Shown piece after piece: positions 6,278 to 62,700 of a stretch of 64,000 bases of DNA; within the stretch, counting starts at the first letter, position 1; each line of letters opens with the position of its first letter. The notes below the pieces were generated by a model. The model had not been told where the DNA came from and ran no database searches. It saw nothing but the letters and a program-made list of their open reading frames with translations. A program made the translations under genes and the position numbers. The stretch comes from Amoebophrya sp. A120 (taxonomy: Eukaryota; Protista; Dinoflagellata). The stretch spans positions 11,368,542-11,432,541 of the forward strand of contig CAJINV010000004.1 of NCBI GenBank assembly GCA_905178155.1. The letters run 5' to 3'.

Positions 6278-9200
6278 TCGTGTGGTCGCAGCTCTCGCAC
6301 GTGATAGTGCCGCTCGTCGTGCACGCTGCCCCCGTTGCGGCCTTCCCATTGCTGCAGCTGCAAATCTTTTGTGGACTACAAACGTGTCTGGTTCTGGATA
6401 ACAAGAATGCAGAATTGTAATCCTGTAATTTGAGGTACGGGCTTTTGCTTTTTATTTCATCCTTGCATGGCTGTAGATTTGATTCTGTGATGCATTTTGG
6501 GACTTTGACTTTGCCTTTCATTATCGTTTGTATAGTATGTCGAAAATAATGCCATTTTTCATGCGTAATACGCAAAATGAACAGAGCTCTCAAAAAAAAC
6601 TGTCATGTTTGCTTACTTTTGGGCGTCCTAGTCTGTGGATCACCAACGAAAGATAAGGGGGGCCACCTGCGTTCCAAACGACCAAGACACATTTGCAGTA
6701 GATAGATTTTGGAAGCAGTGAAAGTTCGTGTCAAGGGTGAAGCCCGCATTGTCGCAGGCGGCGCAAATGTGCGAATCGTGAACGCTGCAGGAGATAATCT
6801 GGGTAGGTCCCGCTTGGACGCCGTTTATGCATTGCAAAAGAAATTCTCACTCTGGCTCAGACAGGAATAAACTGCATACGTAGATCCAGAAAGATAAGCT
6901 CAATTTGGTTTCCAGGCTCATTCACGATCCCCTCCCGCTACTTTGCGCGGCTTTTATACTACGACTCCTTCATGAAAATGCCACGCATTATTCGTGGTCA
7001 TCTAGAAGCACTGCAAGAGCAATTCCTTCGCGCATACACTAAAAGTACAGCAAGAATACTTTTGCAGGGGATACCGTTGTCGCAGCGGCAAATGTTTTGC
7101 TTGCAGTGGCCGTTTTCCAAACGATAATTTGCCGGGTCGTCACAGCTCTCACAAATGTGACCCCCGTCGGCTGTGCAAGCGCTGCCGGTAGCTGGAGCTC
7201 CGTCATCACACTTGCAGACATTCTGCACGCAGCGGTTGGTGCCATCGCTTTCGCCCACGATGCGATATCCGTCGTTGTCGCACTTGCTGCAAATATTGCC
7301 ACCATTGATGGTACACAGCGGACCTGTTTCAGCATCTCCGTTTTCGCAGTCGCAGACATTCTGCAGGCACTTCTCGTTCTCAAGTCGGTAGCCGTTGTCG
7401 ACGCAACGCGTGCAAATTTCTTCACCGTCGCTGGTGCACGCGGCACCGGTAGCAGCGACTCCATCGTCACAGCTACATACGTTTGGCTTGCACAGCTTGG
7501 CCACGGCGTCCAGGTGGAACCCGTCAGCCGAATTGCAGGACTTGCATACCTGCTTGTTGTGCTGGACGCAACTCGGGTCGCCGGGGTCAACCGCGTCTCC
7601 ATTCGTGCACTTGCACTCGTTCTTGATGCAAGTGTGATTGAAAAGCCGATACCCGGCATCACAGCTTTTGCAGATGGTCGCACCGTCCGCGGTGCAGTTC
7701 GCGCCCGTGGCTTGCGTGCCACCCGGACAGCTGCACTGATTGAGGGCGCAGGAGTAGGTGTGCGCATCGAAGTGATACCCTGCTGCGGTGCACGCCGTGC
7801 AGTTTTGCGTGCTACCGTCTTCGTCGCACCCTGCGCCCGTCTTCGGCACCCCGCGGTCGCATTTGCACGTGCGTAGCTTGCACTCGTCGCTACCGTCAGC
7901 AGCTGTGCCAGTGTAGTAGTCTTCGTGGCTGCAGTCGGTACACTTTTCCGTATTGTTCTGCGGGCATTCCGGTCCCGAAGCGGGCGTGCCTGTGAGGCAG
8001 TAGCATAAGTTGGGCGAGCAGATCGTTTTTGTCGGATCGGTCGGGTCGGCTTCGCTGTGGTAACCATCATTACACACATCGCAGTCGGGCGTATTATGCA
8101 CGTCACACGCGGTGCCCGTCGTACCCGACCCGAAGTCGCAGACGCACTGCTTTTCCACGCAGGCCCCGTCTTTCAGAACCGTTCCTGCGGTTGCGCAAGA
8201 GGTGCAGAACGGAGTGGCGTCGACGTCGCAATCCGTGCCCTCCGCTGCGTCGCCAGAGGCGCAGGTGCACTGATTTAGTACGCAGTCGGTGCCCTCCAGG
8301 TGGGACCCATTGTCGCAGGTGTCGCACAGATTCGCGTTGTTGGCCGTGCAGTTTTCGCCTGACTTCGGATCGCCGTTGGCGCAAAGACACACATTTTGGA
8401 AACACTTCTTGTCCGCATCCAGCGTGTAGCCAGCATTTTTGCAACGCGCGCAGATGTCCCCGCCGTCTTCCGTGCAGTCGGACCCTGTGGCGGAATCTCC
8501 ATTGAGGCAATCGCAAATATTTTCCAAACAGTGGCCGTTCTTCAAGCGATAACCGTCGTCATCGCACCGCACACAAGTGTTCGACCCGTCTTGTTTGCAG
8601 GCTGGTCCTATCGAATGCAAATACTTTCTATATGTACTTATGGGTCTGGAGAGGTGCAGCAAATTTCTGTTGCTGAGTCTTGCATATTACCATAGATACA
8701 CAGTGGTCGCTTATACGGCAGTACGGCATAACGAGTTAGTTTTACGGCACTTCTTGCAAATTCTGACTCATTCGCCAATCGCATGATACCAAATATAGCC
8801 GCCGAGGCGGGGGTAGTGAGGTCGCGCGGGGTCTTTTTGACTGGACGACGCCGGGTCTTTTTGCTCTTTTCAGAGGAGAAACGCTCTCCCGCACGCTATG
8901 GCCCCACAAGGGCCTCCGCCAGGGTCGGCCCTTTGGGCCCCCCAAATCGGGCCCACAGCGTGCGGGTTGGCTTGCTGCTTTTGGCGGGATTCCCGTCCTT
9001 TGGCTTTTTTTGTTGAAAAGCCGCGCCCCTGCCGCCTCCTGAATCGAAACGCTTTCCCGCATGCTATAGCCACCCCAGGGCCCCCACCAAGCCCGGCCCA
9101 ATGGGCCCCCAAAATCGGGCCCATAGCATGCGGGTTAGCTTTTAGCTTTTGGCGAGCTTTCCGCTTTTTGTTTTTTTTTTGTAAAAAGTCGCAACTTTTT

Positions 9201-12200
9201 CCCTGCTCCCCGCCTTACAAATGCCCGATTTTGGTGGCCGGCTTTGCGGCCTTCAAAAGTTGGCCAAAATGGGGCCCATACCATGCGGATTCAGGGTTTT
9301 TGTCAGCTTGGCATTTTTTGGGCGTCCCTTTTTGGGCGCCCCAAATCGCCAGAAACCAAGGCGGCGGGCGCCTCGGAAGGGCGCCCCTTTTGCCGGCTCC
9401 CCTGCGTCGTTTTATCCAGTGCGAATCGATAGAATCCGCTCGGGCTTGTTTGATGGCAAAGCCCCGGCCGCTTGATAAGTGAAAACTTTTTATGCTCAAA
9501 AACACTTCCGGCCGCTTGAAAACTGCCGGTCGTTTTGCATAAGACATGTCAAAAAGATCGCTAGATTAGAACGTTCGTGACCTCACTACATACTACTGCC
9601 TTCCAACACGTCAAAAAATCTCGCCACTCATCTCCATGCATCAACACAGATCGTGTTGCTCTCCGAGTCTCGCATTTCACAAATGATCCACACCCAGACA
9701 TATTAAATATTTGCAGTGCATAGGCCCCGTCGCAGCGTCCCCGTGGTCGCACGTGCAGATATCGCACGAAAAGACTGCTTCTCTGCGACTGCGACAGTCT
9801 TTTTTGCATGAATGGCATGACAGGTTTGTCACTCACGACAAAGTAGAAATTAGAAAATTTGTCATGCGCGCTTGATCGTACTTTACTACAACGGAATAAC
9901 AATAAATGGTGCACAGCTAGAAATACCCTTCTTTCCATTTCGCCCAGCACAGCTACTCCCAGTTCTATCTGTGTTGCATGTTCTGCATCGCAAGTTCGCG
10001 GTGAAACAGTTCTTTTGGTGGATAGCATTGGTTCTGGATGCAATGGAAGCTGGCGTCGAGGGTGAAGCCCTCGTTGTCGCACTCCGAGCACATGTATGAA
10101 TTCCAAATATGTCTGGTGTTCTGGAAACAAGACCTTCATACTGCCCAGAGGTAAGAACGACTTGAAATTGAAAGATGTAATATGTACAGTGAGAACTAGG
10201 ACGTCCCCTAGCATGCGAAGCTAAAACTATATTGAGCAGTTCGCGCATTATAACACACTTCTCGCGTCTGGTCTGCTGGATGAATGCACACGTTTGCCAT
10301 GCAGTTGTTGCATGACCCCGAAACTCTCCTCTGGCATGCAAGCAATAGCATCACGGGTGTCAAGGAGGTCTCTCATTTTCAATTCCTGGTCGTATTCCGC
10401 ATGAGAAATCCCTGATTTTGATCAAAATACTTTTGCCGTCCACACATCATGACAGGTTTTTGTGTGATCTAAAATACGCATCACAAGTGTGCACTCTTCC
10501 CGACCCAGATAACGACAACATATTTGCAATGCATAGCATGTGCGAATTGTGACTGCTGCAAGCCACGGCCGTTCCCGGCCCCGCGGGGCTTCCGTCTACG
10601 CAGGTGCACGAGTTCTGTTTGCACTCATCGCCCTCCAGCCGGAAGTTGTGCGGATCGTGACAGCTGGCACAGATGTTGGCGTTGTCGTGCGTGCAATCAG
10701 ACCCGGTCGCCGGTTCACCACCCGTACAGTGACAAGAATTTGACACGCATTCGTTGGTACCATCCGCGACGTTCTCTACGACGTGATACCCCTGGTCGCA
10801 CGCCTTGCAGATGTTGCCCTGGTGGATATCCACCTGAATAGAAACGTCCCCACCCCGAAGTCCTCAAGCTCTTCATTTTGCCACACAAACCAACAACCTT
10901 TATGTGTTGCGAGTAACAGACTTAGCCTCGCATTGCAGTAGTACTTAGCAAGTCAGCCACATCGCAAATTGATCTCCTGAAGATGGTGGTTCATCTAGCG
11001 CGACGAAATTCAAAACACCACTAGAAAATACTTCTCATGGGGCTGCGCACCATCATCATCAGCATCATCATTGAGTGGATCGTTTGCGCATGAGAAACAT
11101 TTTAGGCATGCAGGGAGGTCCACCGTGGGGACGTTTTTACAAGACAAGCATCGGGAGACGGGGACGTTTTTACACAGGTTAGTGGACCGTGCAGTTCGCA
11201 CCCGTCGCACGCTCCCCGTTTGCACACTCGCAGGTGTTCTTCTTGCACTCCTTGTTGGCGGTTAGGCGATAGCCCGCGTTCTTGCATCCCTCACAATTGA
11301 TTGCCTTGTCGACTGTGCAATTTTCGTCCTTCGCTGCGTCTCCGTTGGGGCATCGGCAGACTTTCGGCTCACAGGCGTCGTCTGCAGTCAGCGTGAACCC
11401 GGCGTGCAAGCAGGAAGCACAGATATTCGCCCCGTTGGCAGTACAGTTGGCCCCCGTGGCCGGGGTTCCGACCGACTTCCCCTCGTCGTTGTCGCACGTG
11501 CACAGGTTCTGTTCACAGTGTTTCTCCAACCCACTGGGGCCCGCGACATCGACGAGGCGCAGTCCGTCGTGGTCGCAGCGTGCGCAGACCTCGATTCCCT
11601 CCGTGTGGCACGAGGCGCCGATTACGGGCTCCCCGCCCGAGTTGCAGGTGCACACGTTCGGGATACACCGAGGCTCGGTCCCGTTTTTTTTGTAACCCAG
11701 GTCGCAGGCGTCCGCCGCGCTGTCGCAGATGTGCCCGTCGGCCTCGGTGCACTCCGGCCCGGTGGCCGCTCTGCCGTGGTCGCAGGTGCACGACGTTGGA
11801 TAGCACTTTTTGTCTGCCACGTGAAACGCATAACCCTGGTGGCAGCCGGTCTCTGCGCAAATGTGCGCGTTGTTAGTCGCGCAAGCAGTGCCAGAGGCGC
11901 TTGCACCGTTGTCGCACCAACAGTGGTTCGGCTCGCAGTGGTCGTCTTCGAGGTGAAAGCCCGGATCGCAGGCACGGCAAATGTTGTCTCCGTGGCCGGT
12001 GCAGTGCTCTCCGTCCGCCTCGGTGCCGTTTTCACAGTCGCACTCGTTCTGCGAGCATTTGTGCAAGGCATTCACGTGCTCGTACGCAAATTTGCAGGCT
12101 GTGCAGATGTGCGCGTTATCGCTAGTACACAACGACCCGGTCGCCGGCGTTCCGTCGTCGCAGAAGCAAGAATTCTGCACGCAGACGTCACCTTCAATGC

Positions 12201-15200: not shown

Positions 15201-17601
15201 TTGGTTAACATGCCAGAATCTAAACGATTGCATCTAAACTTTCAGACCTAAACGAATAGGCGTCGAAACGATCGCCCGCGGGTCTAAACTATCAACGCGA
15301 CGTCGCGAGCCTTGCTGGGATTGCAGTCCGCCTGTGCTTTCTTGTTGTCGGAGACTGGACGACAGGAGAGGGGCCGCAATGGTGGCGAGAAGCAACCAAA
15401 AGGAGGCAGAGGGGGAAAGAGTCGAGGAAGGGGAACCGCAGGGGGGCCGGCGAAATACAGCGAGAGAGAGAGTCGTCGGCCAGGGCAGCCGCCGCCGGCC
15501 GGCCGGCCGGCGGCGGCTGCCCTGGCCGACGACAAGAAACCCCAAACCCTAGACCCAAAACCCTAACCCTTGAACCGTTTTCACTTTTGTATGCAAAGTT
15601 GAGAAGTTTAGAGACCTTTCCAAACGTTTACGCGTTTGGTCCAAACGTTTAGTTCCGGGGGTGCAGTTTAGATTCTGGTATGTTAACCACATTTTTTCAT
15701 CGTCTACCTTCTGTTCCTAGTACACATTTTCACAACCTGCAAGAGGGCACTAAGATGCAAACACAATCAACAAACATTCTCGAACTTAAGCGTGGTTCTG
15801 CTTTGCAACTGCAGGGGGAATATAGTCGCCATTGATTATCAGTATTTTAACTGTTCCCTATGCACATTTCTGTTTGTCGTGTTACCCGCAGCGGCCTTTC
15901 GTCCCCGTCCCCGCAGTGCAAGTTTGAGTTTTGCGCGTGTCCTTCTCCCCCTCCCAATACTGCATAGGGTGGACGTACTTATTCGTATTCGCAGTCTGCG
16001 TTTTATCGCATAGAGAGACCACATGGCGGCTGTGGCTCTCAACATCGCAGTACACTCACCACAACACTCACGATCGCAGCCACTTAGGACTATGCATAGT
16101 TGGAGCTCACCACTGAGTCCGGATGAATCGGATGAATGATATTCCGGATGAAATCACGATGAGAATGCCTGGAGAGTCAACGATAGTAGCGAAAAACAGT
16201 ACAAGAGCTATGCTGGGTGTACTTTTCTACATTTGATACGGCGTAGCTCGGAGCGAACATACCGCTCTTGTCCCAACATTTACACTCATACCCCTTATCC
16301 CAACGAAAAAAACTAGCTGCGCATCATATTCGTATAAATAAAAACGCAAAAATGAATACACAAGAAATAGAAAACGATCTGCGTTGCTTGCCTTCAACAG
16401 CATTCTAAGGTGCTTCTACCCACCACGGAGATAATTATTCTCCCACCTCATTTTTGCATAGTAAACACAAACAAACATGATATGCTGGGCTTTCTCTGAA
16501 GGGTATCCCTGGGGCTGGTAGAAGCAGCTCCACGCGTCATAACGATGTTTGCAGATGGTGGTGCCACAACTGATTCGGCTCCCGGCCGTATAACTCCAAT
16601 CCACAGTGCCTTTTACGCACTTGACCGACTTCCCTACTGCGGTCTGCTCGTTCACATACGTGGTGAACCAAGCGCGCTCCTGCTCGGAAATCTTGCTTCT
16701 GGCATGTATTTCGAGAAAGGGGCGGCTAGGCTTCTTCGGCAGATGAAGTGCTTTTTCGGTTTCTTGCTCAACACCAAGAGCATCGTCTTCGTCTTTGTCA
16801 TCTTCTTCGCCTTCCGACCTCGTACCATCCTTCCTCCGTGGACCATCACCAAGACGTCGCTGTTGTGCCAGTACAACTTATCGCAAGGAAAAATCCCCCC
16901 TCCCCATATCGAAAAGAAAATTTGTGATGCTTTTTTGTGATGCTGATTTGTGGCCACAAGTCAACAGCTTTGTCTTGCGTACAAGGCAAACGACACCCAT
17001 GTGGCGCATTGTATAGCGAGTCTGTCACGCGTTTTCATCTATGTCAGACTTGTTTCTCATGCTCAGCTGCTAGCCGGATGCGTACCCAAATGGCCTTAGA
17101 ATCAATATGCCGACAAGCTCTTGCTGCAATACAAAGTTCATTTGTGTACACAAATCCAGCAAAACAAATTTTCTTTGGAATGTGGGGTGGAGGCTTTTTT
17201 CACTTTGATACAACTTCACGCCGGTGTACCGCGTACGCGCCGACAAGTGTTCGCGGAGGCACATGCAGTGCTTGAAACATATCATCTGCAAAAATGTCTG
17301 GGTCTGGAAGAACGCAAGATTTGTCATGCATATTTCTCATGACCCATGATGCCTGTAATGCATGACCTAGCATCGCAGACTTTTAGAGGGCTTCTTGATG
17401 CACCTCCCGCCTGAGAAATGCCCTGTCCGTATAGCACAAATTGTGCCCCTCTTGCTGGTCATGCAATACAATTTTTTTTAGAGTCCAAAAACAGCATGAC
17501 AAGTTGCAATCTTCCAGACCCAGACATTTTTGCATTTGATAAAACAGGAGCCAGTGCCAAACTTGGCCAAGGGCGAGGGAAGTCGGCACGCGCCACACCA
17601 T
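6278..17601 (-). CDS. Giant secreted Cys-rich repeat protein (about 37-aa six-Cys repeats, two spondin/TSP1-like modules); multi-exon, 3' end beyond the window
   Basis: ATG 17601 MVWRVPTSLALGQVWHWLLFQAL (signal-like). Exons approximately 17601-17542, 17279-17211, 16878-16506, 16295-16239, unresolved exons in 14480-16000, 14371-11182, 10826-10536, 10094-10025, 9759-9723, 8608-7074, 6825-6705, 6369-6278. The joins rebuild the CxC-x2-G-x2-ATG-x2-C...CxxC...GY repeat. Confidence 0.85.
6370..6704. mobile_element. Decayed TAT..ATA intronic element (ACA end)
   Basis: Sense DR aaatc/aaaga; join FQNICSC. Confidence 0.7.
6826..7073. mobile_element. TAT..ATA intronic element
   Basis: Exact DR ccgtt; join CDNGVQAG. 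Confidence 0.85.
8609..9722. mobile_element. TAT..ATA intronic element with internal GC-rich insertion
   Basis: Sense DR gggcc/ggacc; join ATGPAC. Confidence 0.8.
8880..9181. repeat. Two diverged ~135-bp GC-rich direct repeats within an intronic insertion
   Basis: aacgct.tcccgca.gctat...aaatcgggccca.agc.tgcgggtt.gctt at about 8880 and 9047. Confidence 0.7.
9760..10024. mobile_element. Decayed TAT..ATA intronic element
   Basis: Sense DR aatgc/tctgc; join QNQCTC. Confidence 0.75.
10095..10535. mobile_element. Decayed family A intronic element
   Basis: Sense DR catgc/catgt; join SHMCSEC. Confidence 0.85.
10827..11181. mobile_element. Family D intronic element (TAA start)
   Basis: Exact DR gtgga; AAACGTCCCC TIR; join TVHQGNIC. 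Confidence 0.85.
14372..14471. mobile_element. Short decayed TAT..ATA intron
   Basis: Sense DR cttga/ccgta; frame restored into the poly-Thr stretch. Confidence 0.65.
15203..15688. mobile_element. Mutator-like MITE in an intron
   Basis: 23-bp TIR GGTTAACATRCCAGAATCTAAAC and 9-bp duplication ACATTTTTT on both sides. Confidence 0.88.
15472..15533. repeat. Perfect 62-bp spacerless GC-rich palindrome
   Basis: GTCGTCGGCCAGGGCAGCCGCCGCCGGCCGG followed by its exact reverse complement. Confidence 0.95.
16296..16505. mobile_element. Decayed intronic element (TAC start)
   Basis: Sense DR aggga/agggg; join PQGYECKC. Confidence 0.72.
16879..17210. mobile_element. Family B intronic element
   Basis: TIR TATC..AAGGAAAAATCCCCCCTCCCCAT; exact DR caact. 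Confidence 0.9.
17280..17541. mobile_element. Family A intronic element
   Basis: TIR TATCA.ATGCAAAAATGTCTGGGTCTGGAAG; exact DR aaaca. Confidence 0.93.
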
Positions 17602-31776: not shown

Positions 31777-31838
31777 AGCGATGATCGAGGGCAAAGCGAT
31801 GATCGAGGGCAAAGCGATGATCGAGGGCAAAGCGATGA
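31777..31838. repeat. 18-bp tandem repeat x3.4
   Basis: (AGCGATGATCGAGGGCAA)3 plus AGCGATGA. Confidence 0.9.
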
Positions 31839-45063: not shown

Positions 45064-45144
45064 ATGTACAAGATCTACTTAATCGTGGAAGCACCAGGAG
45101 GGCCGAACTTGCGGTACACGACGCCGGTCCACGCAGGAGCTCCC

Positions 45145-48326: not shown

Positions 48327-49797
48327 TTAACCTTCATCCATGCTAAATGAAATCCCTGAAAACGACACTTTTGCTTGGCATACCGCGTTGCTGCTTTCCT
48401 CACACAGGTCCTCTGTACTGGCGACACTGAGCTTCGACCTTTTCTGTTTCTCCGCAGTAGTACTCGCACCAGATTGATGAGCAGTCCGACGTCCTCCGTG
48501 AAACGCGTCTGGTAGATGCAGCTTCTCGCCTCCGCAACTAGCATGATCTCCACTACTGCTAAGAAGTTCAATCAACCGCGCCTCCGCGTTTCGATCACAG
48601 AAGACCACTTGCTGTCCGAAGTGCTGGCCGAGCTGGAGTTGTGATGATCTTGGTCCACCGGGAGCGGATGTCGTGTCATCTCTGCTTTTTCTATTTCTCC
48701 GCAGTAAGAGAAGAAAGTTGACCTCGGGTCTTGTACTCCTGCTGTAGTTGAAACAACCCGTTTTTATTCCCCAGGGAGACGAAGCAGCTCCGCAATGTAG
48801 TCCTTGCAACAACTCCTCCTCCGCTGTTCGTCCGCTTCTTTCACGGCCACAAGTAGAAACCACAAGGTCACTGAGCGGCTCCCGCAAGATGTGACTTCCG
48901 TCGTCGTGCCGAAAGAATTATCAAATGCAAAAGTGTCTGAGTCTGGAAGGATGCAACTTGTGATGCGCATTTCAGAACAGAGAGAGCTCTCTCATGCATG
49001 GGTAGCAAAAGCTGCCCACTTTCTGTCACCGAATAATTGGGGGATTTGTCATGCGGATTCGGCATTACGGAAGCTTCTCGAAACCTGTAATGCTAGAGCT
49101 TCCTTGCCAGACCTTCTGTGTCATGCAAAAACAGCATGACTCTTCCAGACCCAGACATTTTTACATTTGATAAGAATTGAGTGGCTTCCGCTTCGGAGAA
49201 GGAAATCCCGAGAACACTGCCAAATTGCTGGAACTTTTCCTGCAGAGGGGAGGCTCTGGTGCCTACGACCTGGACAACGTACACGTTGTCCGTCGTTACC
49301 ATGTAGTAGCAATTGCCACACCGCTCCGCGTCTCCGTAGGTTTCCACTGCTTCAACCAGATTCGCGATCAGATGCAGAAGACAGGACGCGAAGATGACCA
49401 GCACAACCGCCGTTTGGTCGCGAGAGAGCTGGCAGTGGAAAAAACCAGCTTCGACTTCTTCGAGCCTTTTTCTGGAAGTGATATCTTCACTTCTCCAACC
49501 GCCCCAGTAGATTAGTACTGCTGCAGACACCGCCGTACACACGGCGGCGAGGGCGGAAACTGCGAGGGAGTTCGCTTTCTGCTTTTCGAGCAGTTTCATG
49601 TTTTCTTCTCCAAAACGCCAGATGGTCTTGATCTTCTCCTCTTGCGTGTTAGTGTTCGTGTGCTGTCCTTCAGAGATAGCATTTTCTCTGCATTTGTCCT
49701 TTTTTGTCTGCAAATACGCGTTGAAAAAAGCGGTCCACAGGAGGGCATCCTCCCCTGTAGCGCCGGAGAGCAGCAGCTCGGTAGAGGACATCGACAT
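48327..49797 (-). CDS. Hypothetical membrane protein (two hydrophobic segments), 2 exons
   Basis: Removing 48919-49172 plus 5 nt fuses ORF 49093-49797 to ORF 48327-48887 (ATQFFRHDDGSHILREPL). Confidence 0.7.
48919..49172. mobile_element. Family A intronic element
   Basis: Exact DR agaat. Confidence 0.92.
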
Positions 49798-50799: not shown

Positions 50800-53700
50800 T
50801 CAGTCCGCTTTTAACCTCGAAAATGTGATTCGAGTATCTATATCGCGGCAGTACGGAACGAGCAGCAAAAGAATAACGATAGCGGCCGAAAACATAAACA
50901 TGAGAAGGAAATAAAACGAGGAGCTGCTAAGTATACGTCTTCTCATTTGGGTAGAAACTCCTCTTCATCGTCCGACCTACTCCGTCTTTCCGAACATGCC
51001 TTGCAAAACTTTGTTCTTCTTCAGTGCCTCCTGTTCTGGCGTCAGCTCCGTGGTCATCTCAATGCTTGTACTCCCCCCCGGAGCCCCCGAGCCTGTGCTC
51101 ACGCCCCCTCCGTCTGACGCACCACCCCCGCCTCCCTCTGGCGTCGTCTTCGACGAAGCTTGTTGTTTCAGCTTACTCATCGTCCGTCCCCACAGGCTCG
51201 CGCCGCGCGACATAAAGCCCTGCGCCTTCCCGGAAGCTGCGCCGAGATTGCCGCGGGAATTCGACTCCTTCAGCAACTTCGTTTGTTGCTCCAGCAATTC
51301 GGTCTGGTGGTGCTTTTCTTGTTCCTCCGCCTTGTCGTGGCGCCACACCTCGAACCGGGTCAGCGCGATGATAAAAACCAGAATTGCGACGGCGATGTAG
51401 AACAACACCATCAGGTAATTCGACAACCAGGTTGATTCCTCCCCCTTCGGCAGGTGCTCCTCCGCCATCAACAAGAACACCACGAGAGCAAGCATCAGTG
51501 TGACCATGTAGCCCACCCGTTCCCCGCTCTGCCACGGGATGAAGGGGGCGAGGAGCAGCATCATCAGCAACAGAATCACACCCGGGACGACGAAAGTCGC
51601 CGTGTAGACCTTCGACTGCCGCTCGGCCTCTAACGAAAAGTGGAACGTCTCGTACGGGAAAGGGCAGCAGTTCCAGAGCTTGGAGACCAAATACCCTTTT
51701 GTTCTCGCGATTTTCCACTCCGAATTGACCATCACCTCCTGCGCGTTGATGTCCACGCCGGATGTGAAGTCGTCATTTGGTGCGGAGGTGTCGTAGGGCA
51801 GCAGCTTTAGGGCGCCGGCGTCGTAGCCCCAGCTGCCCATCTTGTACTCGCAGGTTTGCGTGTCGTAGGGAAAATCGGCCAGCTTGAAGTTGCACAGTGC
51901 CTGCGGTTTGATACAACAAAAATCTCTATATGTACGTACGACAACATCATTCAAGAAAGCGTACAACATGGCAAGGAGATATTTTTCCGACACCATCGTG
52001 ATAGCTGCGGCGACTTCTGAAACGAAAAAAGAAAAACGTTCACGACACAGGCATAAGTAAATGAAGCAAACCTCAGTACCTTCGTCATCCCCGGTCGACT
52101 CCAGATCACAAGCCCGCTGCGGTACAAGCTCGCTTGGCTCTGCACGAGGTTGTCGAACGGTTTTTCCGCGGTGTTGTACAGTAACAGGTCCTATCAAATG
52201 CAAAAATGTCTGGGTCTGGAAGAATGCAACTCTGGAACTTGTGATGCTGCCTTTGGATTCTTATGGCGATGGCAGAAACTTTTTGCTCCAAAACTTTTTT
52301 TTTTTTGGGCATGCAATTCATTCATCATGAAAACCAGACACCTTCTGGGCGGTGAATATTCCGCGCATGAGCAGGGCGGCTTTTTCTGTAGGCTGAGCTA
52401 GCTAGTCTGAATACAGGCACAAGGCCCGCCGGCCCGTCGGCTGCGTCACGGATTCGCCCTGAGCCCTTTGGCCTCGAGGTGCGTGACAGCTAGGTCCCCT
52501 GCCGCGGCCTTGGCGTATCGAGAACTAGTTCAGGATTTGGCAGCGCAATGCTGACTGTTCGCACAAGAGCGGCAATCTCAAACGAGCATGGCCAGGGGGC
52601 CTGGCGTGCCATAGCTTCCAAAGTACTCTGCGAGGCACAGACAGTGTAGGCGTACAGAGCCAATAAAGTCGCCCAGTTTATTCCGGGCCCGATTGTGTAA
52701 AGCCCGTCCTTGCGGGGTTCGCGTGATCATTTTTCCTGACATTGCTTTTGAAAAGCTGCAAACTTGCGGAAGCAAAAAGAGGGCTCGGGCCCCCCCTTGA
52801 GGGGGGGGGGGTTTGGGGGACCCCCCTTCGTGGAGATACCAATGGGGAGCACCCTTCTGAGAAGACCCAAAAAGGGGGGGGGGTTTGGGGGTGCCTCTGG
52901 GGGTACCCCTTGAAAGCTTTTGCTTGCTTCCGGAGACACAAGATTCTTTTGCTCTTTGCAAAGCAACCGGGGCTGAAAAGGGCTGGCCCGAGACCAAAAC
53001 CCGAAGTCGCTGCGTATCCGCGGCGGCTAAGTCGTCGGCGCCGTCGCGCTTAGCTTTCAACTGTTTGACAGCCGAGTATGACCACATTTTTTGCCTGCCG
53101 GGGCACGGGCCGGCTGTTTGCCACGGACCGCGGCACAAACGGCCACGGTTTGGCTGCGTATTTCTTTTATTCGACCAGTGCCATCCCATGCGGTGGCTAT
53201 CCGGCTCCTGCGCATGCCGTCACGGACCAATTCCGGGACGCAACCGCCGGCGAAGTTTTCCTTGTTTCTGCTTACAGGCTAACGAGCTTCAGAGAGGCAC
53301 AAAGCCGGCGCGCTCATGCGTGAGATATTTGCCGCTGAGAAGATGGCTACTTTTCGCGCTGGGTGATTCGCATGCCCAAAAAAAAAAAAGTTTTGAAGCA
53401 AAAAGTTTCTGCCATCGCCATAATTCTCAAAAAATCTGTATTGCATGAGCAGCCAAGGGAACGCGTTTTTTGCTACGCGAAGAGGGCATTTGCCATGCGG
53501 AATAGGCATCAACAACTCCTCAAAGAATCTGTGACGCTAGGGCATGCATCACAGACATCATGGCTCATACAAAACGCGCATGACAAGTCTCAGAATCTTC
53601 CAGACCCAGACATTTCTACATTTGATAGGTCCGGCACCCAGACCGACCGGCCCTGAATCGGGTCGGTGGGTACGGAGATCATCGCAGGCGTTTCCACCTG

Positions 53701-54805
53701 CCGGGTCACCAGTGTATACCCCAGCGACTGCAGTACCGTGGCGTCCTCTTCGTTCACGATCTTGAACGAGTTCGGGTCACCGCTGGCGATCAAATCTGGC
53801 GTCCCCATCACGGTGGTGACGTTCAGGAACTGCGGGTAGACCAGGCGGTGGTCCGTCCATTTCTGCCGCAGCCAGATCGCGATCCGGATGGTGCCGTCGA
53901 GTTGGTCCAAGTTCTCCAGCGCTTGCACGTAGATCTGGATCCGCACGTTGGTCGCGGGCACGGAGGGGAGGGTAAAGTTCCCCGAGGAAGTCCGGATGTC
54001 GTTCAGCGCCAGCTGGTCGATCGGCCGGGAGTCGGCTTGGTACCCCTTGAAAAGGTATCAAATGTAAAAATGTCTGGGTCTGGAAGAATGCAACTTGTCA
54101 TGCTAAATCCGAATCATGCAGAAATCTGTGTTGCATGAGTGCCAAAAGCTGTCTCCTTTTGACCAAGTTGAGAGGGAGTTTCTCATGCAGGAAAGGCATG
54201 ATAGAGCCCTAAAAGAATCTGTCATGCTGGGTCTCGCATTCCAGACCTCATGGGTCATGGAAAACCTGCATCACAAATCTCGTATTCTTCCAGACCCAGA
54301 CATTTTTACATTTGATAAAAGGTTCGCCTTCAAAACCTCCTCGGCGGTGAGCGACCGCCGCGTCTCCGCCTATGAAAAGGAAAAATCCCCCCTCCCCATA
54401 TCAAAAGGGAAGTCTGTGATGCTGGATTTGCGTACACAAATCAGATTTGTATTGCAGGAAGGCACTGCGGCCAGATCCCCAGGTTAGGGAGGGGCGTATG
54501 GATCTAGTTGGTCAGCATTGCAAACGGCTGACCTTTAGACCCAACAGCATGACCAATCGCTTCCATAATGGGGCGGAAGCTTCTGCCCTTGTCTTCTTGC
54601 AAGACAAATGTGATTTGTGACCTCAAGTCAGCAACAGAAATTTTCGGAAAGATACCTTTTCGATATGGGGAGGGGGGATTTTTCCTCTCAATACCGCCGG
54701 GTGAGTGTACTGCGCGGCGGCAGACTGGGTCTGCTCGTTGTGGACGAGACTCAGGAAGAAGAGCGAAGAGGCTAAACGCCTCCGCGCGATCTTCCAGGAG
54801 GACAT
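50800..54805 (-). CDS. Pentameric ligand-gated ion channel, nicotinic acetylcholine receptor alpha-like
   Basis: Reconstructed EEVLKANLFKGYQADSRP, WLRQKWTDHRL, WVPDLLLYNTA, Cys-loop CNFKLADFPYDTQTC, vicinal CC in WNCCPFPY, GERVGYMVTLMLAL (M2). Three TAT..ATA introns, a GT-AG intron at 51901-52079, and a probable 54-nt GT-AG intron at 50927-50980 before M4. Confidence 0.92.
52192..53627. mobile_element. Family A intronic element hosting a nested element
   Basis: Exact DR ggtcc; join WVPDLLLYN. Confidence 0.95.
52262..53422. mobile_element. Family C element nested in a family A element
   Basis: About 53-bp TIR TATGGCGATGGCAGAAACTTTTTGCT...; exact DR attct. Confidence 0.94.
54056..54317. mobile_element. 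Family A intronic element
   Basis: Perfect 34-bp TIR; exact DR aaagg; join NLFKGY. Confidence 0.95.
54371..54693. mobile_element. Family B intronic element
   Basis: Exact DR ccgcc; join HPAETRR. Confidence 0.93.
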
Positions 54806-56109: not shown

Positions 56110-58694
56110 CTATCGGCGCGCTACTTTTGGGGACCGATCACCCCCGTGGCTCTCCTCAGCATTGGACCGTTTCCTAGCGCCCCCAACTGGCGAAGACGCG
56201 CCGCTTTGTTCTTGCCACGCACGCAAACTTTCGCCCGCAGCCCGATCGCTCGGCTGCAGCACCCTGGACCCGCGTGCGTTGGAAGACCGCGGATGGTCCA
56301 GCGAGTCCTGGGACGTGTTCCGCGGAAGCTGCATCTCCGGGCCGTCCTGCGTAGAGGGCAACCCGTTGCGCGACACGCTGTTTTCCAGCACCGCCTGCGG
56401 ATGATCCTGGGCCCCATCCAGCGGATCCTGCTGGCTCACCGACGGAACCGAGCGCCAGCCGAACGGCTTCGCCTGGTACTGCGCCAACAGCGCTTGCATC
56501 CGGCGCACCACGACTTCGCGCTCCGTTTCGCCAAACTCCGGCGCTTTCGGTGGGCAAAACCACAACAGCCGGATCTGGTTCTTCACGTGCGGTTGCCCGC
56601 CACCGTCGCCGCTGGAGTTGGGCTCGAAAGCGGGTTCCACCTTCTTGTCGTACCACGCCAGATACAACCGCGGATCCCGCTCGCCGTTGCCGTTGTGAAA
56701 GACCTCGTCGTTCACGTACAAACAGCTCAACGAACCCTCCTGCAGCGACTCCGTCATGTGGTCTCGGAGGATCTTCTCCGCGCTAGGGGAGAGTTTGTAG
56801 TCAGCCCGATTGAACCGTACACTCCTACTAGTGCCACGCAGGCTCTCAATCCAGGCGTTCCAGTCGATGTTGGGCAAATTCGTCACCAGGAAATCGTGCA
56901 GCTCCCGCTTCACCTCCTCCTTTCTCGCCTTGCTTTGGAAAATCTGCGACCCAAACGCGGATCCCGCAAAGGTAGAGCTGTTAACACTACCTCGTGGCTC
57001 CCACACGTAGCTGCCGACGTCGATCAGGGTCTCCTTCGCGCGTTTTTGCACCACCTGGTCGTGGAACTTGCTAGCTTCGTCATCATCCGCAATCATTTCC
57101 TTCACGAACGAGTCCGTCAACCGCAGGTAGTTGTCGACGCTGAAGTTTTCTTCGGTCAAATCCGAAAAGCGCAGCAGTTTCTGGAAAGCCGCCTTGCTGT
57201 GGGTTTTCAACAGCTGCATCTCCCGCAGCTTGCACCGCTCCATGCGGACCACCACGGGGTGGAGGTACATGCTCTGGTACACGCGACTGCGAAAGTCGAA
57301 CACGGCCGAGTCGCGGTCCTTGGACGGAAAGGCGGCGGTGAGGACGTACGTGTCGCGCCGCCGCTCTCGCGCTTTTTGCTCGATCTGCCGTGGCGTCAGC
57401 TTCGCCTTCATCTTCGCAGCGGTAGTTGTAGAAGCGTTGGGATTCTTGTTAGTATCAATCCGTTGCTCAACATAATTCTCGGAATGATTATTCTCCTCCC
57501 CCTCCTCGTCCCCCTCGCTCCTCGTTCCGCTGGTGGATCCGGGGCACGCGGCCTCCTGGTGCGCCACCACGCGGATCGAACTCTTGACCCGGTTCCAGCA
57601 GATCGGACAGGACACCTTGGCGTGGTAGGTGTCCCGCAGGAAGTAGTCCAGTCTATCCACATCCAACCCGCCCCGCCAGTTGGACAGCAACTCAAACGTC
57701 CAGGCGTACTCGATCGGGCGGGACTGGATGTGCTTGCCCCACTCCTCGTGCAGCCGCCCGGTCCGCAGCGCTTCCTGCAGCTCCTTTTTCCCCGGAACGT
57801 CGATCAGCTCCTGGATGTACAGCAGGTCCTTCTCGTTCCAGTCCAGCACGTATGAGAGTGCACAACTACTCCCTCGCCTCCCCCTCATTTGTATAGCATA
57901 ATCGGCATCACAAGCAATGGCACAAATGTGGCTGTCGCATGACAAATCCACGTACGGACTGGAGTGCGGTTTGGGCATCGAGAACTTGTCATGCGTTTGG
58001 TGCCAAAGAGCAAGCGGGGATTTCTTGGCATTTTGCATGACGAATCAGGGGGACGAGGGGGAGTTATGCACTCTCATAGCACGGGGATCAGCGGCTCGTG
58101 GTCCTCGCAGAACTTCCAATACTCCTCCTTCATCACGTCCTTCACGTCCTCCCAGACCGCCTGCACCAGCAGCTTGGAGGCCGTCTCGTGCGACCAGGTG
58201 GGGTCGTCCCCGTTTTCCCGGCGGAACACCTCGAACATGTGGGAGAACGGGGCGTGCCCCAAATCGTGGCACAGCGCCGCCACGATCAGGCAGATGCGGT
58301 CCTTGTCGTTCAGCCGCAGGTTCTCCCGGACGGCCAGCACCCAGGGGTCCTTGATCTTGCCCTCCTTCACGCGGTTGAACTTGACCAGCGCGGTGAACTG
58401 CTCCTGGTCAAACTCCCGCAGAAACGCGCACATCAGGTACCCCACGCCGATGCTGTGCGCGAACCGGCTGTGCGTCGCGTCCTTGTACACGTACTCCACC
58501 AGGGCGAGCTGCTTGATCTCCCGCAACCGCTGCACTATGCGGTGGTCGATCACGCAGTTGAAAATCAACGGCAGCGCCACCTCGTTGTACACTGCGTCGT
58601 TCGTTGTCCACGAGGACATGTGCCACAGCTGACTCTCCTCCCAACCAGAAGGGAGGGTGGAGATTGAGCCGGCGTCGTCCGCAACTGTTGCCAT
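56110..58694 (-). CDS. SAMHD1-like HD-domain dNTP triphosphohydrolase, 2 exons
   Basis: QRLREIKQL, ATHSRFAHSIGV, ALCHDLGHAPFSH, WSHE, DVDRLDYFLRD, MYLHP. Intron at 57851-58078. Confidence 0.92.
57851..58078. mobile_element. Family E intronic element
   Basis: Exact DR gcacg; join IPVLDWN. Confidence 0.93.
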
Positions 58695-59744: not shown

Positions 59745-62700
59745 TCACCTTCCCGAAAACTCGCTCGCCGAAGCCGATGGGTCGGTTACTGCCAAGTCAT
59801 TTGCCGCCTGCCGCAGCACCCGCATTTCCTCGCGCCCCGCCTCGAGCGCGAGGTTCTGCCCCGTCGTGGGCCTCGCCGTGCTGAAACTCCGCGCCGCGTA
59901 GTTGACACTGACGTGACTCGCGTTGCTGACACTCCGCGAACGCGAAGTTACCCCAGCCGCGTTACTGCTATCCGAGTAAAGCTGCTTCGGGTGCTCATCT
60001 TCACCGTCGTCCCCCATGGGTAGCAACTCTTTATTTCTGACAACTCCACTAGCCGAGGCGCTCGTCAGAACATTCGTTGTTGCCGCGGAGTCGCCCCGCG
60101 AAAGCACCACCCTGGCGCTCCGGCTCGCCTGCGAGTACGCGCCCATCGCGGTGTCAGTCGGGTCGCCCAGCCGGCGGAAGGACCCGTCGCTCGGGACTGT
60201 GTAGAGCGAGGAAGCCTCGGTCCGGAACAGAAAGTAGACGACGACCAGGAGAATTCCGAGCACGATGAAGAAGGTCAAGCACCCCAAGCCCAAGCTCGGC
60301 CCGGCGATCAGAATCACCCAGGAGGCCTCTTCCTTGTCCGGCTTCGCCTCGACGGTGTCCACGATCGGTAACCCGGGCGGGATGGTGGACACGGCGTGTT
60401 CGATTTCCATCGGGAATTGAGAATCCACGAACACTTTCTCCGCGGTGGCACTGTCCTGCACGATCAGGTGTTTCTCCATCAACTTCCCGGCAACGGTGCA
60501 CCGCTCCACCGTGAACGCCCGCTCCGAGAGCAGCTCGTGCGGCACGGGCTTGTTTACTGGCGGCGAGCCGGCGCCAGCGGTGCCGTCCACAGTAAAGTAG
60601 TCGCCGCCGGTCTTGCTCATTGATGCGCTAGCGCTGCCCCCACCCAGCAGGAGCACCGCATCTTTATCGGAGGATGCGGCTTCCGGGACCTCCTTGTTCG
60701 GTGAAGGAGCACGACCACCTTCTTCCACCGCGAAGATCGTTTCGTACCACTGCTTCGGATCGAAGGTCGGGGGAAAGAGGCGGCACTTCTGTTTTCTGGT
60801 GTCGTAGGTGAACGCCACGCAGTCCCGCAGGGTGTCCGATTTGCCGCTGTGAAACCACCACTGCGGGTGCCGCGGATTCCACTTGCCCGACACCTTTAAC
60901 CTTTTCCGCAGCGCGGGGCTGCTCTGGTAGGCGTCCAGCCCGACAAAAGACGGACCACACTCGTGCTCCGCCAGGCACTCGCTTAACGACTTGTCGTCCG
61001 TTTCGTTTGCGAACTGCCCCGCATGAAACACCCACGGCTGCACGTTGTCGTTCGCGAGGACCGCCAGCTGCTTGCTGTTGACGATGTCGATGTAGCACTT
61101 CCGGCACTGCAGGACCCGCTTCCGGCGGTCCGCGCACTGCAGCCCGCAGGACTCGGAGAGGCCGAGCGTGCTGTACGACCCGAGTGCGTTGTGCACCTCC
61201 TCGCTGACCGGGTCCGTTTCGTAGCTGCTCCAGTGGAACACCTCGGTTTTGTTGTTTCCGTCACGTTGCGCGTGAGTTACGCTTCGAACCGCGTACTCCA
61301 CGCTGTTGTCCGCGCCGCTCCACTCGCGCACGTGGTCCAGCGCGGAGGCCATCTCAATGTCCACGGCCTGCGAGCAGGGACAGGAGGTGTGGGAGTGTCA
61401 GGTTTGAAATCGTCAAAGTTGAAATAGTTTGCGATGCATAAAATGCAAGCCACAAAGTGCTTGTCTTGCTGAGTAGGCAAGGGAGGCAGATTGTATGCCT
61501 GTTGAGGGGTAGCAGTAGAGCTGCTAAAGTAGCATGACAAAAGGCGTCTTCCTTACCCAAACAGCATGACAAACTGGGTTTCTGCTCTTCCCAAATTTGT
61601 CATGCGCCAGCTGGAAACTGGACACCAACGGGCATCCATTTTATGCATGGCAAATCATTTCAACTTTGTCGATTTCAATCCTGACAGTTCCATATGAGAA
61701 GAAGACGCGGTACTCCACGGGGGACCCGGCCATCTTTTTCAGGCCCTGCTCCACGCAGAACTCCCGCGGGGGCCACGGGTCACTAGCCGTGTAGGTGGTC
61801 GGTGGCGGAGCTTCCGGCTCGGCTGGTCCTTCTTCCTCTTCTTCCTCGTCCCCCGGGCCACTTGCCTGTCCTGCTCCGTCCAGATGACTTACGTCCCCGA
61901 GGTCAGAAGAACGACCCTCACCCGAGGCGCCCAGAAGCACGGGCACATTGCGCCTTCCCTGCAATTTCGCCCGCCAAGCGGCTTGGTTGTCCTCGTCTTC
62001 CGCAGCCTTGAGCAGGTGCAGAGCGTCCTCCTCAACCGGGAGTCCGTGCTTCTCCGCCACCTCCCGCAATTTCGCCAACGCCGCAATCAGCACGCCGCCC
62101 GTTTGCGGCGCCTCCGGGTCGGACTCGGAGGTGGCCTCTTGAAGCAATAGGTACGCCTGCAGAAGCTCCGGGTCCTCCGGCTTGCCCGTCGCGTCGACAG
62201 ACACAGCTACGCCGTCCTTCTCTAAGCCCAATTTCACGCTGCACCACACCTTTTTACTGCTTGATGTTGTCCTTTCATCATCCGGATCCTGTGGTACTTG
62301 CCTTTGGGGAGATTTACCGGTCTCCTCGAACAAGGCGAGCACCTCCTTGCGAACCCGCTTGGGCGAGCCTCTCGCCTCGAAAACGGCTGCAAACAACTGC
62401 GAGACCGTGACTACGGGGGTTGCTTCTCTGTTTAGAATCTCGGCGCAGGACTGGTCCTGCGCCTGCTTTACAACTGCACGATCTAGCGGAGCCGGTGGTA
62501 ACCCCGAAGATGATGAAACTGCGAGGTCTACTGGCACCTCGGCCGCCTCCACCTCATCCTCTGTCGCCATTGCTTTGCTGTTGTCTGCCGCTTCGTCAAC
62601 ATCCGGCGAGAGGGTCGGCTCTGGCACCGCATCTGCCGGCTCATCTCCTTCGCTTCCCGCAGAAACAGCGGTGGTATTTTGATGTTGTGAATTTTGTTGA

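What the first reader, a model, noticed from the sequence alone, without database searches (positions are those of the whole stretch)
6370..61694. Pervasive GT-AG-independent introns made by TAT..ATA inverted-repeat elements with 5-bp duplications
Seen in sequence: 49 insertions interrupt coding exons of 8 genes. Each is bounded by TAT-N7-(A-rich)...ATA inverted repeats and a 5-bp direct repeat. Deleting the element plus 5 nt restores the frame and conserved motifs (WVPDLLLYN, NLFKGY, Cys repeats). The 5-mers are arbitrary (ccttt, ggacc, tgttt, gataa), so no fixed splice dinucleotide exists at any register. Only about 4 GT-AG introns coexist in the same genes. Established knowledge: similar introner elements were reported in Amoebophrya, with the excision mechanism unresolved as far as I know. 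Inference: a second, structure- or TIR-guided removal pathway works alongside the spliceosome.
Basis: partly seen in the sequence, partly recalled or inferred. Interest (0 to 1): 0.95.

Follow-up and report, generated by a model that had tools for sequence, protein, structure and literature searches.

The report
Published Amoebophrya A120 introner-element introns

Summary
With conservative criteria I recover 38 TAT...ATA inverted-repeat elements, plus one nested inside another, between 6826 and 61694. They are flanked by 5-nt direct repeats; shuffled sequence gives about one.

- **Frame:** removing each element plus 5 nt restores reading frames. In 12 of 13 confident junctions, and 13 of 13 after one boundary correction, the frame fits. 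One 936-aa ORF appears across nine joins.
- **Source genome:** two proteins deposited for Amoebophrya sp. A120 match the window at 100% identity. They join exons exactly by the element-plus-5 rule at five elements, next to one GT-AG intron.
- **Splice sites:** only 3 of 38 elements could be GT-AG in any register.

All of this is published for this genome (Farhat et al. 2021, PMC7789003): the TAT + 7 nt + A-run inverted repeat, 5-bp direct repeats, about 30,000 repeated introns, RNA-seq support, and an unresolved mechanism. Other windows of this scan flagged the same thing.

My RNA test failed for lack of coverage, so the proposed second removal pathway remains untested.

Small additions:
- the last base of the 5' repeat copy is intronic (two cases);
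- a 1.2-kb nested insertion is tolerated;
- both element orientations sit inside ORFs.

Novelty: already known.

The parts
6826..7073 (-). Introner element (IE), 248 nt; 5-nt repeat in sense AACGG/AACGG
   Evidence: frame fits element+5
8609..9722 (-). IE, 1114 nt; repeat GGGCC/GGACC (1 mismatch, synonymous)
   Evidence: lies in a 606-aa joined ORF
9760..10024 (-). Older IE, 265 nt; repeat AATGC/TCTGC (3 of 5 match)
10095..10535 (-). IE, 441 nt; repeat CATGC/CATGT; the conserved Cys needs the T of the 3' copy
10827..11181 (-). IE, 355 nt; repeat TCCAC/TCCAC; one terminal base diverged
16879..17210 (-). IE, 332 nt (C-run family); repeat AGTTG; weak coding context
   Evidence: (I6)
17280..17541 (-). 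IE of the main family, 262 nt; repeat TGTTT; opposite orientation to most copies; weak coding context
   Evidence: (I13)
18219..18585 (-). IE, 367 nt; repeat GCGTC/GCGTA; weak coding context
20822..21073 (-). IE of the main family, 252 nt; repeat GACTG
   Evidence: (I24); lies in a 522-aa joined ORF
22232..22545 (-). Older IE, 314 nt; repeat CGTTG/GGTCG (3 of 5); GT-AG possible in one register
23396..23714 (-). IE, 319 nt; repeat TTTGA/TTTAA
23812..24020 (-). Older IE, 209 nt; repeat CAGAC/CGGGC (3 of 5)
25181..25430 (-). IE of the main family, 250 nt; repeat TCCTG
   Evidence: DNA contig crosses its edge
25631..25794 (-). IE, 164 nt; repeat CAACG/CACCG
25996..26317 (-). IE of the C-run family, 322 nt; repeat CCGTG
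   Evidence: (I16)
26885..27100 (-). IE, 216 nt; repeat GATAA
27474..27726 (-). IE of the main family, 253 nt; repeat TCAAG; opposite orientation, yet inside the 936-aa joined ORF
27812..28020 (-). IE, 209 nt; repeat CAGCG
28062..28395 (-). IE of the C-run family, 334 nt; repeat TGACA; one terminal base mutated
28448..28758 (-). IE, 311 nt; repeat AACTC/AAGTC
29096..29376 (-). IE, 281 nt; repeat GGTGT; GT-AG possible in one register
32608..32873 (-). IE of the main family, 266 nt; repeat TCGGA; weak coding context
   Evidence: (I9)
32946..33224 (-). IE, 279 nt; repeat GACCC
33282..33648 (-). IE, 367 nt; repeat GGTCG; GT-AG possible in one register
33680..34068 (-). IE, 389 nt; repeat CATCA
34222..34518 (-). 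Older IE, 297 nt; repeat AGCCC/AGCGG; both terminal triplets diverged by one base
   Evidence: (I22)
36121..36282 (-). IE, 162 nt; repeat GTCAC/GGCAC
36314..36635 (-). IE of the main family, 322 nt; repeat CCAAC/GCAAC
   Evidence: (I14)
36801..37074 (-). IE of the main family, 274 nt; repeat GCATC
   Evidence: (I23)
41840..42091 (-). IE intron 2 of the CHORD gene, 252 nt; repeat GCACT/GCACG; the deposited protein uses the G of the 3' copy (a T would make a stop)
42163..42424 (-). IE intron 1 of the CHORD gene, 262 nt; repeat GGAAA
   Evidence: (I18)
48187..48382 (-). IE, 196 nt; repeat CGCGG/TGCGG
   Evidence: lies in a 403-aa joined ORF
48919..49172 (-). IE of the main family, 254 nt; repeat ATTCT
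   Evidence: (I25)
52192..53627 (-). IE intron 3 of the Cys-loop channel gene (splits WVPD|LLLYN); 1436 nt, a main-family element carrying a nested insertion; repeat GGACC
   Evidence: (I10)
52262..53422 (.). Nested 1161-nt TIR element (122-132-nt arms, repeat ATTCT on +) inside the previous IE; removed together with it
   Evidence: (I1)
54056..54317 (-). IE intron 2 of the Cys-loop gene (splits AN|LFKGY), 262 nt, perfect 34-nt arms; repeat CCTTT
   Evidence: (I11)
54371..54693 (-). IE intron 1 of the Cys-loop gene, 323 nt (C-run family); repeat GGCGG
   Evidence: (I12)
57851..58078 (-). IE, 228 nt; repeat CGTGC
   Evidence: lies in a 789-aa joined ORF
61388..61694 (-). Older IE, 307 nt, 62-nt arms; repeat TCTCA/CCTCC (3 of 5); the frame fits only with these boundaries
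   Evidence: (I2)
51901..52079 (-). Canonical GT-AG intron (179 nt) in the same Cys-loop gene
51133..54805 (-). Cys-loop ligand-gated channel gene. With the 3' repeat copy counted as exon, the exons are 54699-54805, 54323-54370 (48-nt micro-exon), 53633-54055, 52080-52191 and 51133-51900. Deposited protein P0001 (Amoebophrya sp. A120)
41737..43307 (-). CHORD-domain gene; exons 42430-43307, 42097-42162, 41737-41839; deposited protein P0004 (Amoebophrya sp. A120)
25087..30279 (-). 936-aa ORF that exists only after nine IEs (+5 nt each) are removed; no homologue, no transcript evidence found

Best explanation
These are the introner elements (IEs) of Amoebophrya sp. A120. They are short, non-autonomous MITE-like DNA transposons with TAT...ATA terminal inverted repeats. 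They inserted into exons and duplicated 5 bp of target. The elements stay in the DNA, are transcribed, and are removed from the RNA as exactly 'element + one copy of the 5-nt repeat', which rebuilds the original codons. The cut sites are not set by splice-site dinucleotides. They sit at a fixed total offset of 5 nt from the base of the hairpin formed by the two arms, and the 5' cut lies at least 1 nt upstream of the element. My leading guess for the machinery is the strain's own re-tooled major spliceosome, reported to lack U1, helped by the hairpin. Shown here: the anatomy, the transposon character, the frame and motif restoration, and agreement with deposited gene models. Taken from the literature: the genome-wide RNA-seq support. 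Inferred: the hairpin as ruler, and the spliceosome as executor.
For: - **Identity:** P0001 and P0004 are 100% identical to window exons and are named Amoebophrya sp. A120. The assembly has 115.5 Mb.
- **Anatomy:** 38 elements against about 1 by chance. In 34 of 36 folded elements the two arms pair, median z -4.2. Two examples form stems of 30-34 bp starting at or within a few nt of the termini, z -10 and -8.
- **Transposon character:** the main family has 3406 first-look candidates. Its top copies are 93-99% identical, and the flanking 5-mers are perfect and differ between sites.
- **Precise removal:** five IE joins in deposited proteins follow element + 5 nt. The joins are colinear with orthologues. 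The frame test gives 12 of 13, or 13 of 13 with corrected boundaries; one third is expected by chance. A 936-aa ORF spans nine joins.
- **Old insertions:** old elements with 3-of-5 repeats still sit in open frames.
- **No splice code:** GT-AG is possible in 3 of 38.
- **Termini matter, content does not:** a 1.2-kb nested insertion is tolerated. Both orientations occur in ORFs.
- **Register:** two imperfect repeats show that position 5 comes from the 3' copy.
- **Literature:** Farhat et al. 2021 report RNA-seq-supported non-canonical introns, the same motif, a near-complete set of spliceosomal proteins, and U2, U4, U5 and U6 but no U1. Relatives with canonical introns have U1. U6 is present here with an intact ACAGAGA box.
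Against: - No transcript read was laid on this window. The two raw RNA runs gave 0 reads, and the presumed RNA contigs covered only repeats.
- The gene models I rely on come from the same RNA-seq that the paper used, so they are not independent of it.
- Reverse transcriptase can jump between short direct repeats across a hairpin and fake such joins.
- A spliceosome that accepts arbitrary terminal dinucleotides has no precedent.
- My own U1 search is uninformative, because the same tool also missed U2, which the paper reports as present.
Confidence: 0.5

Rival explanations
1. Same elements and same RNA-level removal, but carried out by a dedicated non-spliceosomal activity. An endonuclease would recognise the terminal hairpin and cut at measured distances, and an RNA ligase would join the ends. 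This is comparable in logic to the nonconventional introns of Euglena.
For: There is no conserved dinucleotide in any register. Both orientations and a large nested insertion are tolerated, so only the symmetric termini seem to matter. Strong terminal stems are present. In Euglena, splice positions are defined by spacing from a paired CAG/CTG motif. The original authors favour a mechanism distinct from the usual machinery.
Against: No candidate enzyme is known. The exon flanks cannot form a bulge-helix-bulge, because the repeats are direct and not complementary (inference from sequence). The reported loss of U1 only in the strains rich in such introns points to a changed spliceosome rather than a bystander one.
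Confidence: 0.3
2. A polymerase jump between the two 5-nt direct repeats across the hairpin. Either reverse transcriptase does this in vitro (an artefact in the RNA-seq), or the transcribing polymerase does it in vivo.
For: The signature 'intervening hairpin + one repeat copy lost, any repeat sequence' is what template switching gives. This rests on established knowledge of RT artefacts, not on a test here.
Against: An artefact alone cannot explain conserved genes that are open only after removal and colinear with orthologues. It also cannot explain a genome with about 30,000 such insertions. Old elements whose repeats match in only 3 of 5 positions still sit in intact frames. At 41840 the transcript keeps the 3' copy's base, which fits poorly with a jump after copying the whole first repeat.
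Confidence: 0.05
3. IES-like removal from DNA in transcribing nuclei, as in ciliates, so that the RNA never contains the elements.
For: Precise loss of a transposon plus one target duplication is what ciliate IES excision does. No life-stage DNA series was examined.
Against: In DNA run X1, unbranched contigs at single-copy depth (33-47x) cross the exon-element borders of eight elements. No listed joint skips an element precisely. Element sequence is present in the presumed RNA contigs. No germline/soma split is known in Amoebophrya (established knowledge).
Confidence: 0.03
4. The insertions are not removed at all. The interrupted genes are young pseudogenes, and the gene models are wishful.
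For: The nine-intron ORF at 25087-30279 has no homologue, no deposited protein and no transcript contig.
Against: Conserved genes (Cys-loop channel, CHORD) carry IEs and remain 72% and 53% identical to relatives across the joins. Diverged old elements lie in still-open frames. RNA-seq support is published genome-wide.
Confidence: 0.02

Closest known systems
Introner elements (IEs) of Amoebophrya sp. A120, Farhat et al. 2021 (PMC7789003)
   Same: Same genome. Same inverted-repeat motif (TAT, seven variable nt, then an A-run). Same 5-bp direct repeats at the exon/intron borders, hairpin, repeated families and coexistence with GT-AG introns. The mechanism is stated as unknown.
   Different: Nothing essential differs. 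This window adds only details: position 5 of the repeat comes from the 3' copy in two cases, a nested 1.2-kb insertion is tolerated, and both orientations occur within ORFs.
TIR/TSD introners of Micromonas, Aureococcus, Polarella and others (Gozashti et al. 2022, 2025; PMC9860276, PMC12130899)
   Same: DNA-transposon-derived introns with terminal inverted repeats and target duplications, spreading in bursts. A120 is listed among introner-rich species.
   Different: Those elements carry a GT or AG splice site, or recruit one from the duplication, and are ordinary spliceosomal introns. Here 29 of 38 cannot form GT/GC/GA-AG or AT-AC in any register.
Nonconventional introns of Euglena (Nomura et al. 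2025, PMC12501133)
   Same: They coexist with GT-AG introns. Borders are variable, the intron ends pair, and cut positions are set by spacing from the paired motif. The machinery is unknown.
   Different: The Euglena code is a short CAG/CTG pair with 3 nt and 5-6 nt spacers. There are no 20-60-nt inverted repeats, no 5-nt direct repeat rule, and no recognisable MITE families in that paper.
Internal eliminated sequences (IESs) of ciliates
   Same: Transposon-derived insertions in coding sequence, removed precisely together with one copy of the target duplication, without a splice consensus.
   Different: IESs are cut out of DNA in the somatic nucleus by domesticated transposases. Here the DNA keeps the elements at full depth and removal is reported from RNA.
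Non-canonical introns of Fritillaria and other tunicates (PMC13326754)
   Same: A majority of introns escape GT-AG and are handled by an altered major spliceosome.
   Different: The tunicate introns still show preferred terminal patterns and are not hairpin-ended transposons with target duplications.

Membership tests
Amoebophrya A120 introner elements (Farhat et al. 2021) | Located in the A120 nuclear genome | tested here: met
   P0001 and P0004, named Amoebophrya sp. A120, are 100% identical to window exons on an 11.76-Mb contig. The assembly has 115.5 Mb.
Amoebophrya A120 introner elements (Farhat et al. 2021) | Inverted repeats at the intron ends that start with TAT, then about seven variable nt, then at least three A | tested here: met
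   against the paper's text.
Amoebophrya A120 introner elements (Farhat et al. 2021) | Direct repeats of 3-5 nt (5 bp in their Fig. S19) at the exon/intron borders | tested here: met
   23 perfect, 10 one-mismatch and 5 two-mismatch 5-mers. Young copies elsewhere in the genome have perfect 5-mers that differ between sites. Paper.
Amoebophrya A120 introner elements (Farhat et al. 2021) | Repeated families | tested here: met
   3406 first-look candidates for one family; top copies 93-99% identical. The elements reach huge summed depth in DNA contigs.
Amoebophrya A120 introner elements (Farhat et al. 2021) | Removal from transcripts at non-canonical sites, supported by RNA-seq | tested here: inconclusive
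   No RNA coverage of the stretch laid. Five joins are supported indirectly by deposited gene models and orthologue colinearity.
Miniature inverted-repeat transposable element (MITE, class II) | Terminal inverted repeats, target-site duplication of fixed length, small size, no coding capacity, many copies | tested here: met
   Lengths are 162-441 nt, apart from two larger composites.
Miniature inverted-repeat transposable element (MITE, class II) | A cognate autonomous element with a transposase | not tested
   None in this window. Farhat et al. found no transposase in A120. Gozashti et al. 2025 report integrase-like TIR elements. Other notes of this scan name candidates, unchecked.
Spliceosomal (U2- or U12-type) intron | GT-AG, GC-AG or AT-AC termini | tested here: not met
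   Possible in some register for only 9 of 38 elements (this count also includes GA-AG); GT-AG for 3 of 38.
Spliceosomal (U2- or U12-type) intron | Branch point and lariat | not testable with these tools
   Needs branch-spanning reads.
Self-splicing intron or ribozyme (group I, group II, hammerhead and others) | Match to a known catalytic RNA fold | tested here: not met
   No Rfam family matches at E <= 0.1 anywhere in the window.
Ciliate-type IES | Excision from DNA | tested here: inconclusive
   DNA contigs of one run keep all eight tested elements at single-copy depth without branches. No life-stage series was available.

The most novel reading that the evidence does not exclude
IE introns are removed by a sequence-blind, hairpin-measuring RNA excision and ligation activity that is not the spliceosome. 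It would cut at a fixed 5-nt total offset from the base of the terminal stem, with the 5' cut at least 1 nt upstream of the stem. It would work in either element orientation and ignore what lies in the loop. That would be a third kind of nuclear mRNA intron removal, co-adapted to the 5-bp stagger of the transposase that spreads the elements.
Probability: 0.3. Interest if true: 0.85.

Novelty: already known. Interest (0 to 1): 0.3.

Why it matters
The biology is remarkable. Thousands of transposon copies sit in coding exons and are removed without any splice-site code. This bears on how introns are born and on how far splicing can drift. But it has been in print for this very genome since 2021 and has been taken up in later introner surveys.

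For the scan, the result shows that a sequence-only reader can rediscover the phenomenon accurately. This class of finding from this genome should be pooled, not rescored window by window.

What remains open is the removal machinery and the exact cut register. The imperfect-repeat trick used here would let the published RNA-seq answer the register question directly.

Tried and rejected
1. **RNA reads.** The single read-laying run (24400-30399) gave 0 reads from two raw RNA runs. A presumed RNA contig set covered only repeats.
2. **HMMER search.** The largest exon of the nine-intron ORF against 1.84 billion representatives gave no hit, not even itself. That gene has no deposited model.
3. **Word search with the 738-aa ORF at 45148-47361.** It returned only the window's own unspliced ORF call.
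4. **Closed or exhausted tools.** The orientation and register statistics therefore stayed small.
5. **First frame test by open-codon length.** It was too noisy in this GC-rich sequence and was replaced by a codon-score test.
6. **snRNA searches.** U1 gave no hit, but U2 gave none either, although U2 is published as present. I reject my U1 negative as evidence.
7. **Brute-force listing of GT-AG options in the gaps**. The output was unreadable; I read the gaps directly instead.
8. **Register inference in 26 extra loci.** No informative stop-codon case was found.
9. **Joined models.** Searches were by single exon or ORF reference. Joined sequences were used only inside scripts, for frame counting.

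Full report
**Source of the window.** A word search with an ORF of the channel gene returned a 486-aa protein that is 100% identical. It is named 'unnamed protein product, partial [Amoebophrya sp. A120]' and lies on an 11.76-Mb contig. A second search returned a 349-aa CHORD protein of the same organism, also 100% identical, together with its A25 orthologue. The assembly has 115,520,608 bases and the window is C4:11368542-11432541. So the window is from the genome in which Farhat et al. 2021 described 'introner elements'.

**Observation.**
- A strict scan required TAT...ATA ends, at least 14 of 20 complementary bases in the terminal inverted repeats (TIRs), and a perfect 5-bp flanking repeat. 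It found 19 elements against 0-1 in shuffles.
- A gapped-TIR scan with one repeat mismatch found 41 candidates against 0-1. Allowing two mismatches added five credible older elements.
- After removing chimeric pairs I keep 38 elements plus one nested element. Lengths are 162-441 nt, with two composites of 1114 and 1436 nt. Together they make up 23% of the span.
- Of the 38, 23 have perfect 5-mers, ten have one mismatch and five have two. The 5-mers are all different.
- The elements fall into several families. The largest has arms beginning TATCAAATGYAAAAATGTCTGG. A second has a C-run (TATGAAAAGGAAAAATCCCC).
- Reading gaps by eye turned up further degenerate members that my scans had missed.

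**Do they behave as introns?**
- All positive coding signal is on the minus strand.
- I determined the coding frame independently on each flank by codon scores. The length that must be removed agrees with element + 5 nt at 12 of 13 confident junctions. The thirteenth (61388-61694) agrees once its degenerate ends are placed as. One third would agree by chance.
- Removing all elements + 5 nt yields single open frames of 936 aa across nine joins (25087-30279), 1200 aa across two, 606 aa across two, and so on.
- In the Cys-loop channel gene, the deposited protein P0001 maps to five exons. Three introns are IEs (54371-54693, 54056-54317, 52192-53627). The fourth is an ordinary GT-AG intron (51901-52079).
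- The joins recreate the N-terminal helix (...EEVLKAN|LFKGY...) and the WVPD|LLLYN motif inside the Neur_chan_LBD match. A relative that is 72% identical is colinear across them.
- In the CHORD gene, P0004 maps to three exons separated by IEs 42163-42424 and 41840-42091. The A25 orthologue is colinear across the first join.
- Old elements whose repeats now match in only 3 of 5 positions still sit in open, in-frame exons. This argues that the host genes stayed functional long after insertion.

**Absence of a splice code.** Because the flanks are direct repeats, six cut registers give the same mRNA. Across all six, GT-AG is possible for 3 of 38 elements. Any of GT/GC/GA-AG or AT-AC is possible for 9 of 38. 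No Rfam family, ribozymes and group I/II introns included, matches the window at E <= 0.1.

**Structure and transposon character.**
- Folded as RNA, the two arms pair in 34 of 36 elements; the median z-score against shuffles is -4.2.
- For 54056-54317 the stem is 34 perfect base pairs starting exactly at the termini (z -10). For 54371-54693 it is about 30 bp (z -8).
- The family of 54056-54317 has 3406 first-look candidates in the genome. The 30 best copies are 93-99% identical. Each has a perfect 5-nt repeat, and the repeats differ between insertion sites. This marks a recently active class II element with a 5-bp target duplication.
- In DNA run X1 the elements reach summed depths of 10^3-10^5 against about 45 for unique sequence.

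**RNA and DNA reads.** Two raw RNA runs under the species label laid 0 reads. The presumed RNA contigs of X4 covered only element sequence, not the unique exons. The join rule is therefore not tested by reads for this window. The same call does bear on DNA-level excision. Eight unbranched DNA contigs at single-copy depth (33-47x) run across exon-element borders, and none of the listed joints skips an element precisely.

**What is already published.**
- Farhat et al. 2021 (PMC7789003) report 66,565 RNA-seq-supported introns in A120, more than 60% of them non-canonical.
- They report inverted repeats of 8-20 nt and direct repeats of 3-5 nt, and 29,850 repeated introns making up 17% of the assembly.
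- Their Fig. S19 shows 5-bp direct repeats. Their Fig. S23 places the repeats 1-5 nt from the splice sites.
- They note coexisting canonical introns at conserved positions, a near-complete set of spliceosomal proteins, and U2, U4, U5 and U6 but no U1. They conclude that the splicing mechanism should differ from the usual one.
- Later work lists A120 among introner-rich species. Two later papers restate the facts without a mechanism.

**Small additions from this window.**
1. **Register.** At 41840-42091 the two repeat copies differ (sense GCACT upstream, GCACG downstream). The deposited protein reads ...GKHEDENNY, which needs the G; a T would make a stop. At 10095-10535 (CATGC/CATGT) the conserved Cys of the repeat motif needs the T. 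In both cases the last base of the upstream copy is intronic. The 5' cut therefore lies at least 1 nt upstream of the element, not at its first T.
2. **Nested insertion.** The intron that splits WVPD|LLLYN is a 270-nt main-family element that itself carries a 1161-nt nested element with its own 5-bp duplication. The 1436-nt composite is removed as one unit. Loop content therefore does not matter.
3. **Orientation.** Main-family copies lie in both orientations relative to the coding strand, about 21 to 8. One opposite-orientation copy (27474-27726) sits inside the nine-join ORF. The signals that matter should thus be in the symmetric termini. The sample is small and some coding calls are weak.

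**Mechanism.** That the elements are transposon insertions with 5-bp duplications is shown. That the mature coding sequence lacks exactly element + 5 nt is shown at the level of gene models, homology and frames. At the level of RNA it rests on the literature. That the hairpin sets the cut sites is inference. For the machinery:
- **Altered spliceosome, about 0.5.** I lean to this because the reported loss of U1 tracks the strains with such introns, while relatives with GT-AG introns keep U1. Tunicates also show that a spliceosome can be re-tooled.
- **Dedicated endonuclease and ligase pathway, as in Euglena, about 0.3**.
- **Polymerase or RT jumping between the repeats, 0.05.**
- **DNA-level excision, 0.03.**
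- **No removal, 0.02.**

My own snRNA searches add little. U6 is present with an intact ACAGAGA box. U1 gave no hit. But U2, published as present, gave none either, so the negatives are not informative.

**Verdict.** The feature is real and accurately observed, but it is already known. The interest lies only in the still-open mechanism.

Noticed in passing
window 1-6097: Copia-like LTR retrotransposon on the minus strand. Its 300-nt LTRs (1-300 and 5798-6097) are 99% identical. ORF 1835-4108 has sub-threshold RVT_2 and retroviral SH3 hits. Each LTR holds an inverted-repeat structure of about 230 nt.
   Followed up: partly
window 25087-30279 (-): A 936-aa ORF that exists only after nine IEs are removed. 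It has no hit among 1.84 billion representative proteins, no deposited model found and no transcript contig. It is either an orphan gene or a young pseudogene.
   Followed up: partly
window 52262-53422; also 44329-44763: A 1161-nt element with 122-132-nt arms and its own 5-bp duplication is nested inside another IE. Pieces of about 150 nt recur at 44.3-44.8 kb.
   Followed up: partly
window 15472-15533: Perfect GC-rich palindrome, 31 + 31 nt with no spacer, between two genes (I20).
   Followed up: no
window 35247-35365: Inverted repeat with 48-nt arms and a 23-nt spacer in a GC-rich stretch. It is not of the TAT...ATA type (I7).
   Followed up: no
window 54323-54370 (-): A 48-nt micro-exon of the channel gene lies between two IE introns of different families.
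   Followed up: yes
whole window: All ORFs with a positive codon score lie on the minus strand. This is a unidirectional gene cluster, as reported for this genus.
   Followed up: partly
G000 (whole assembly): the genome search found U6 (106 bits, eight full copies) but neither U1 nor U2. U2 is published as present, so this tool's snRNA negatives on this genome should not be trusted.
   Followed up: partly
L004-L032 (30 loci of the main family): Flanks of 1.5 kb around young copies hold about three further IEs each, roughly one per kb. L009-L012 are two pairs of duplicated loci with a 583-nt composite element.
   Followed up: partly
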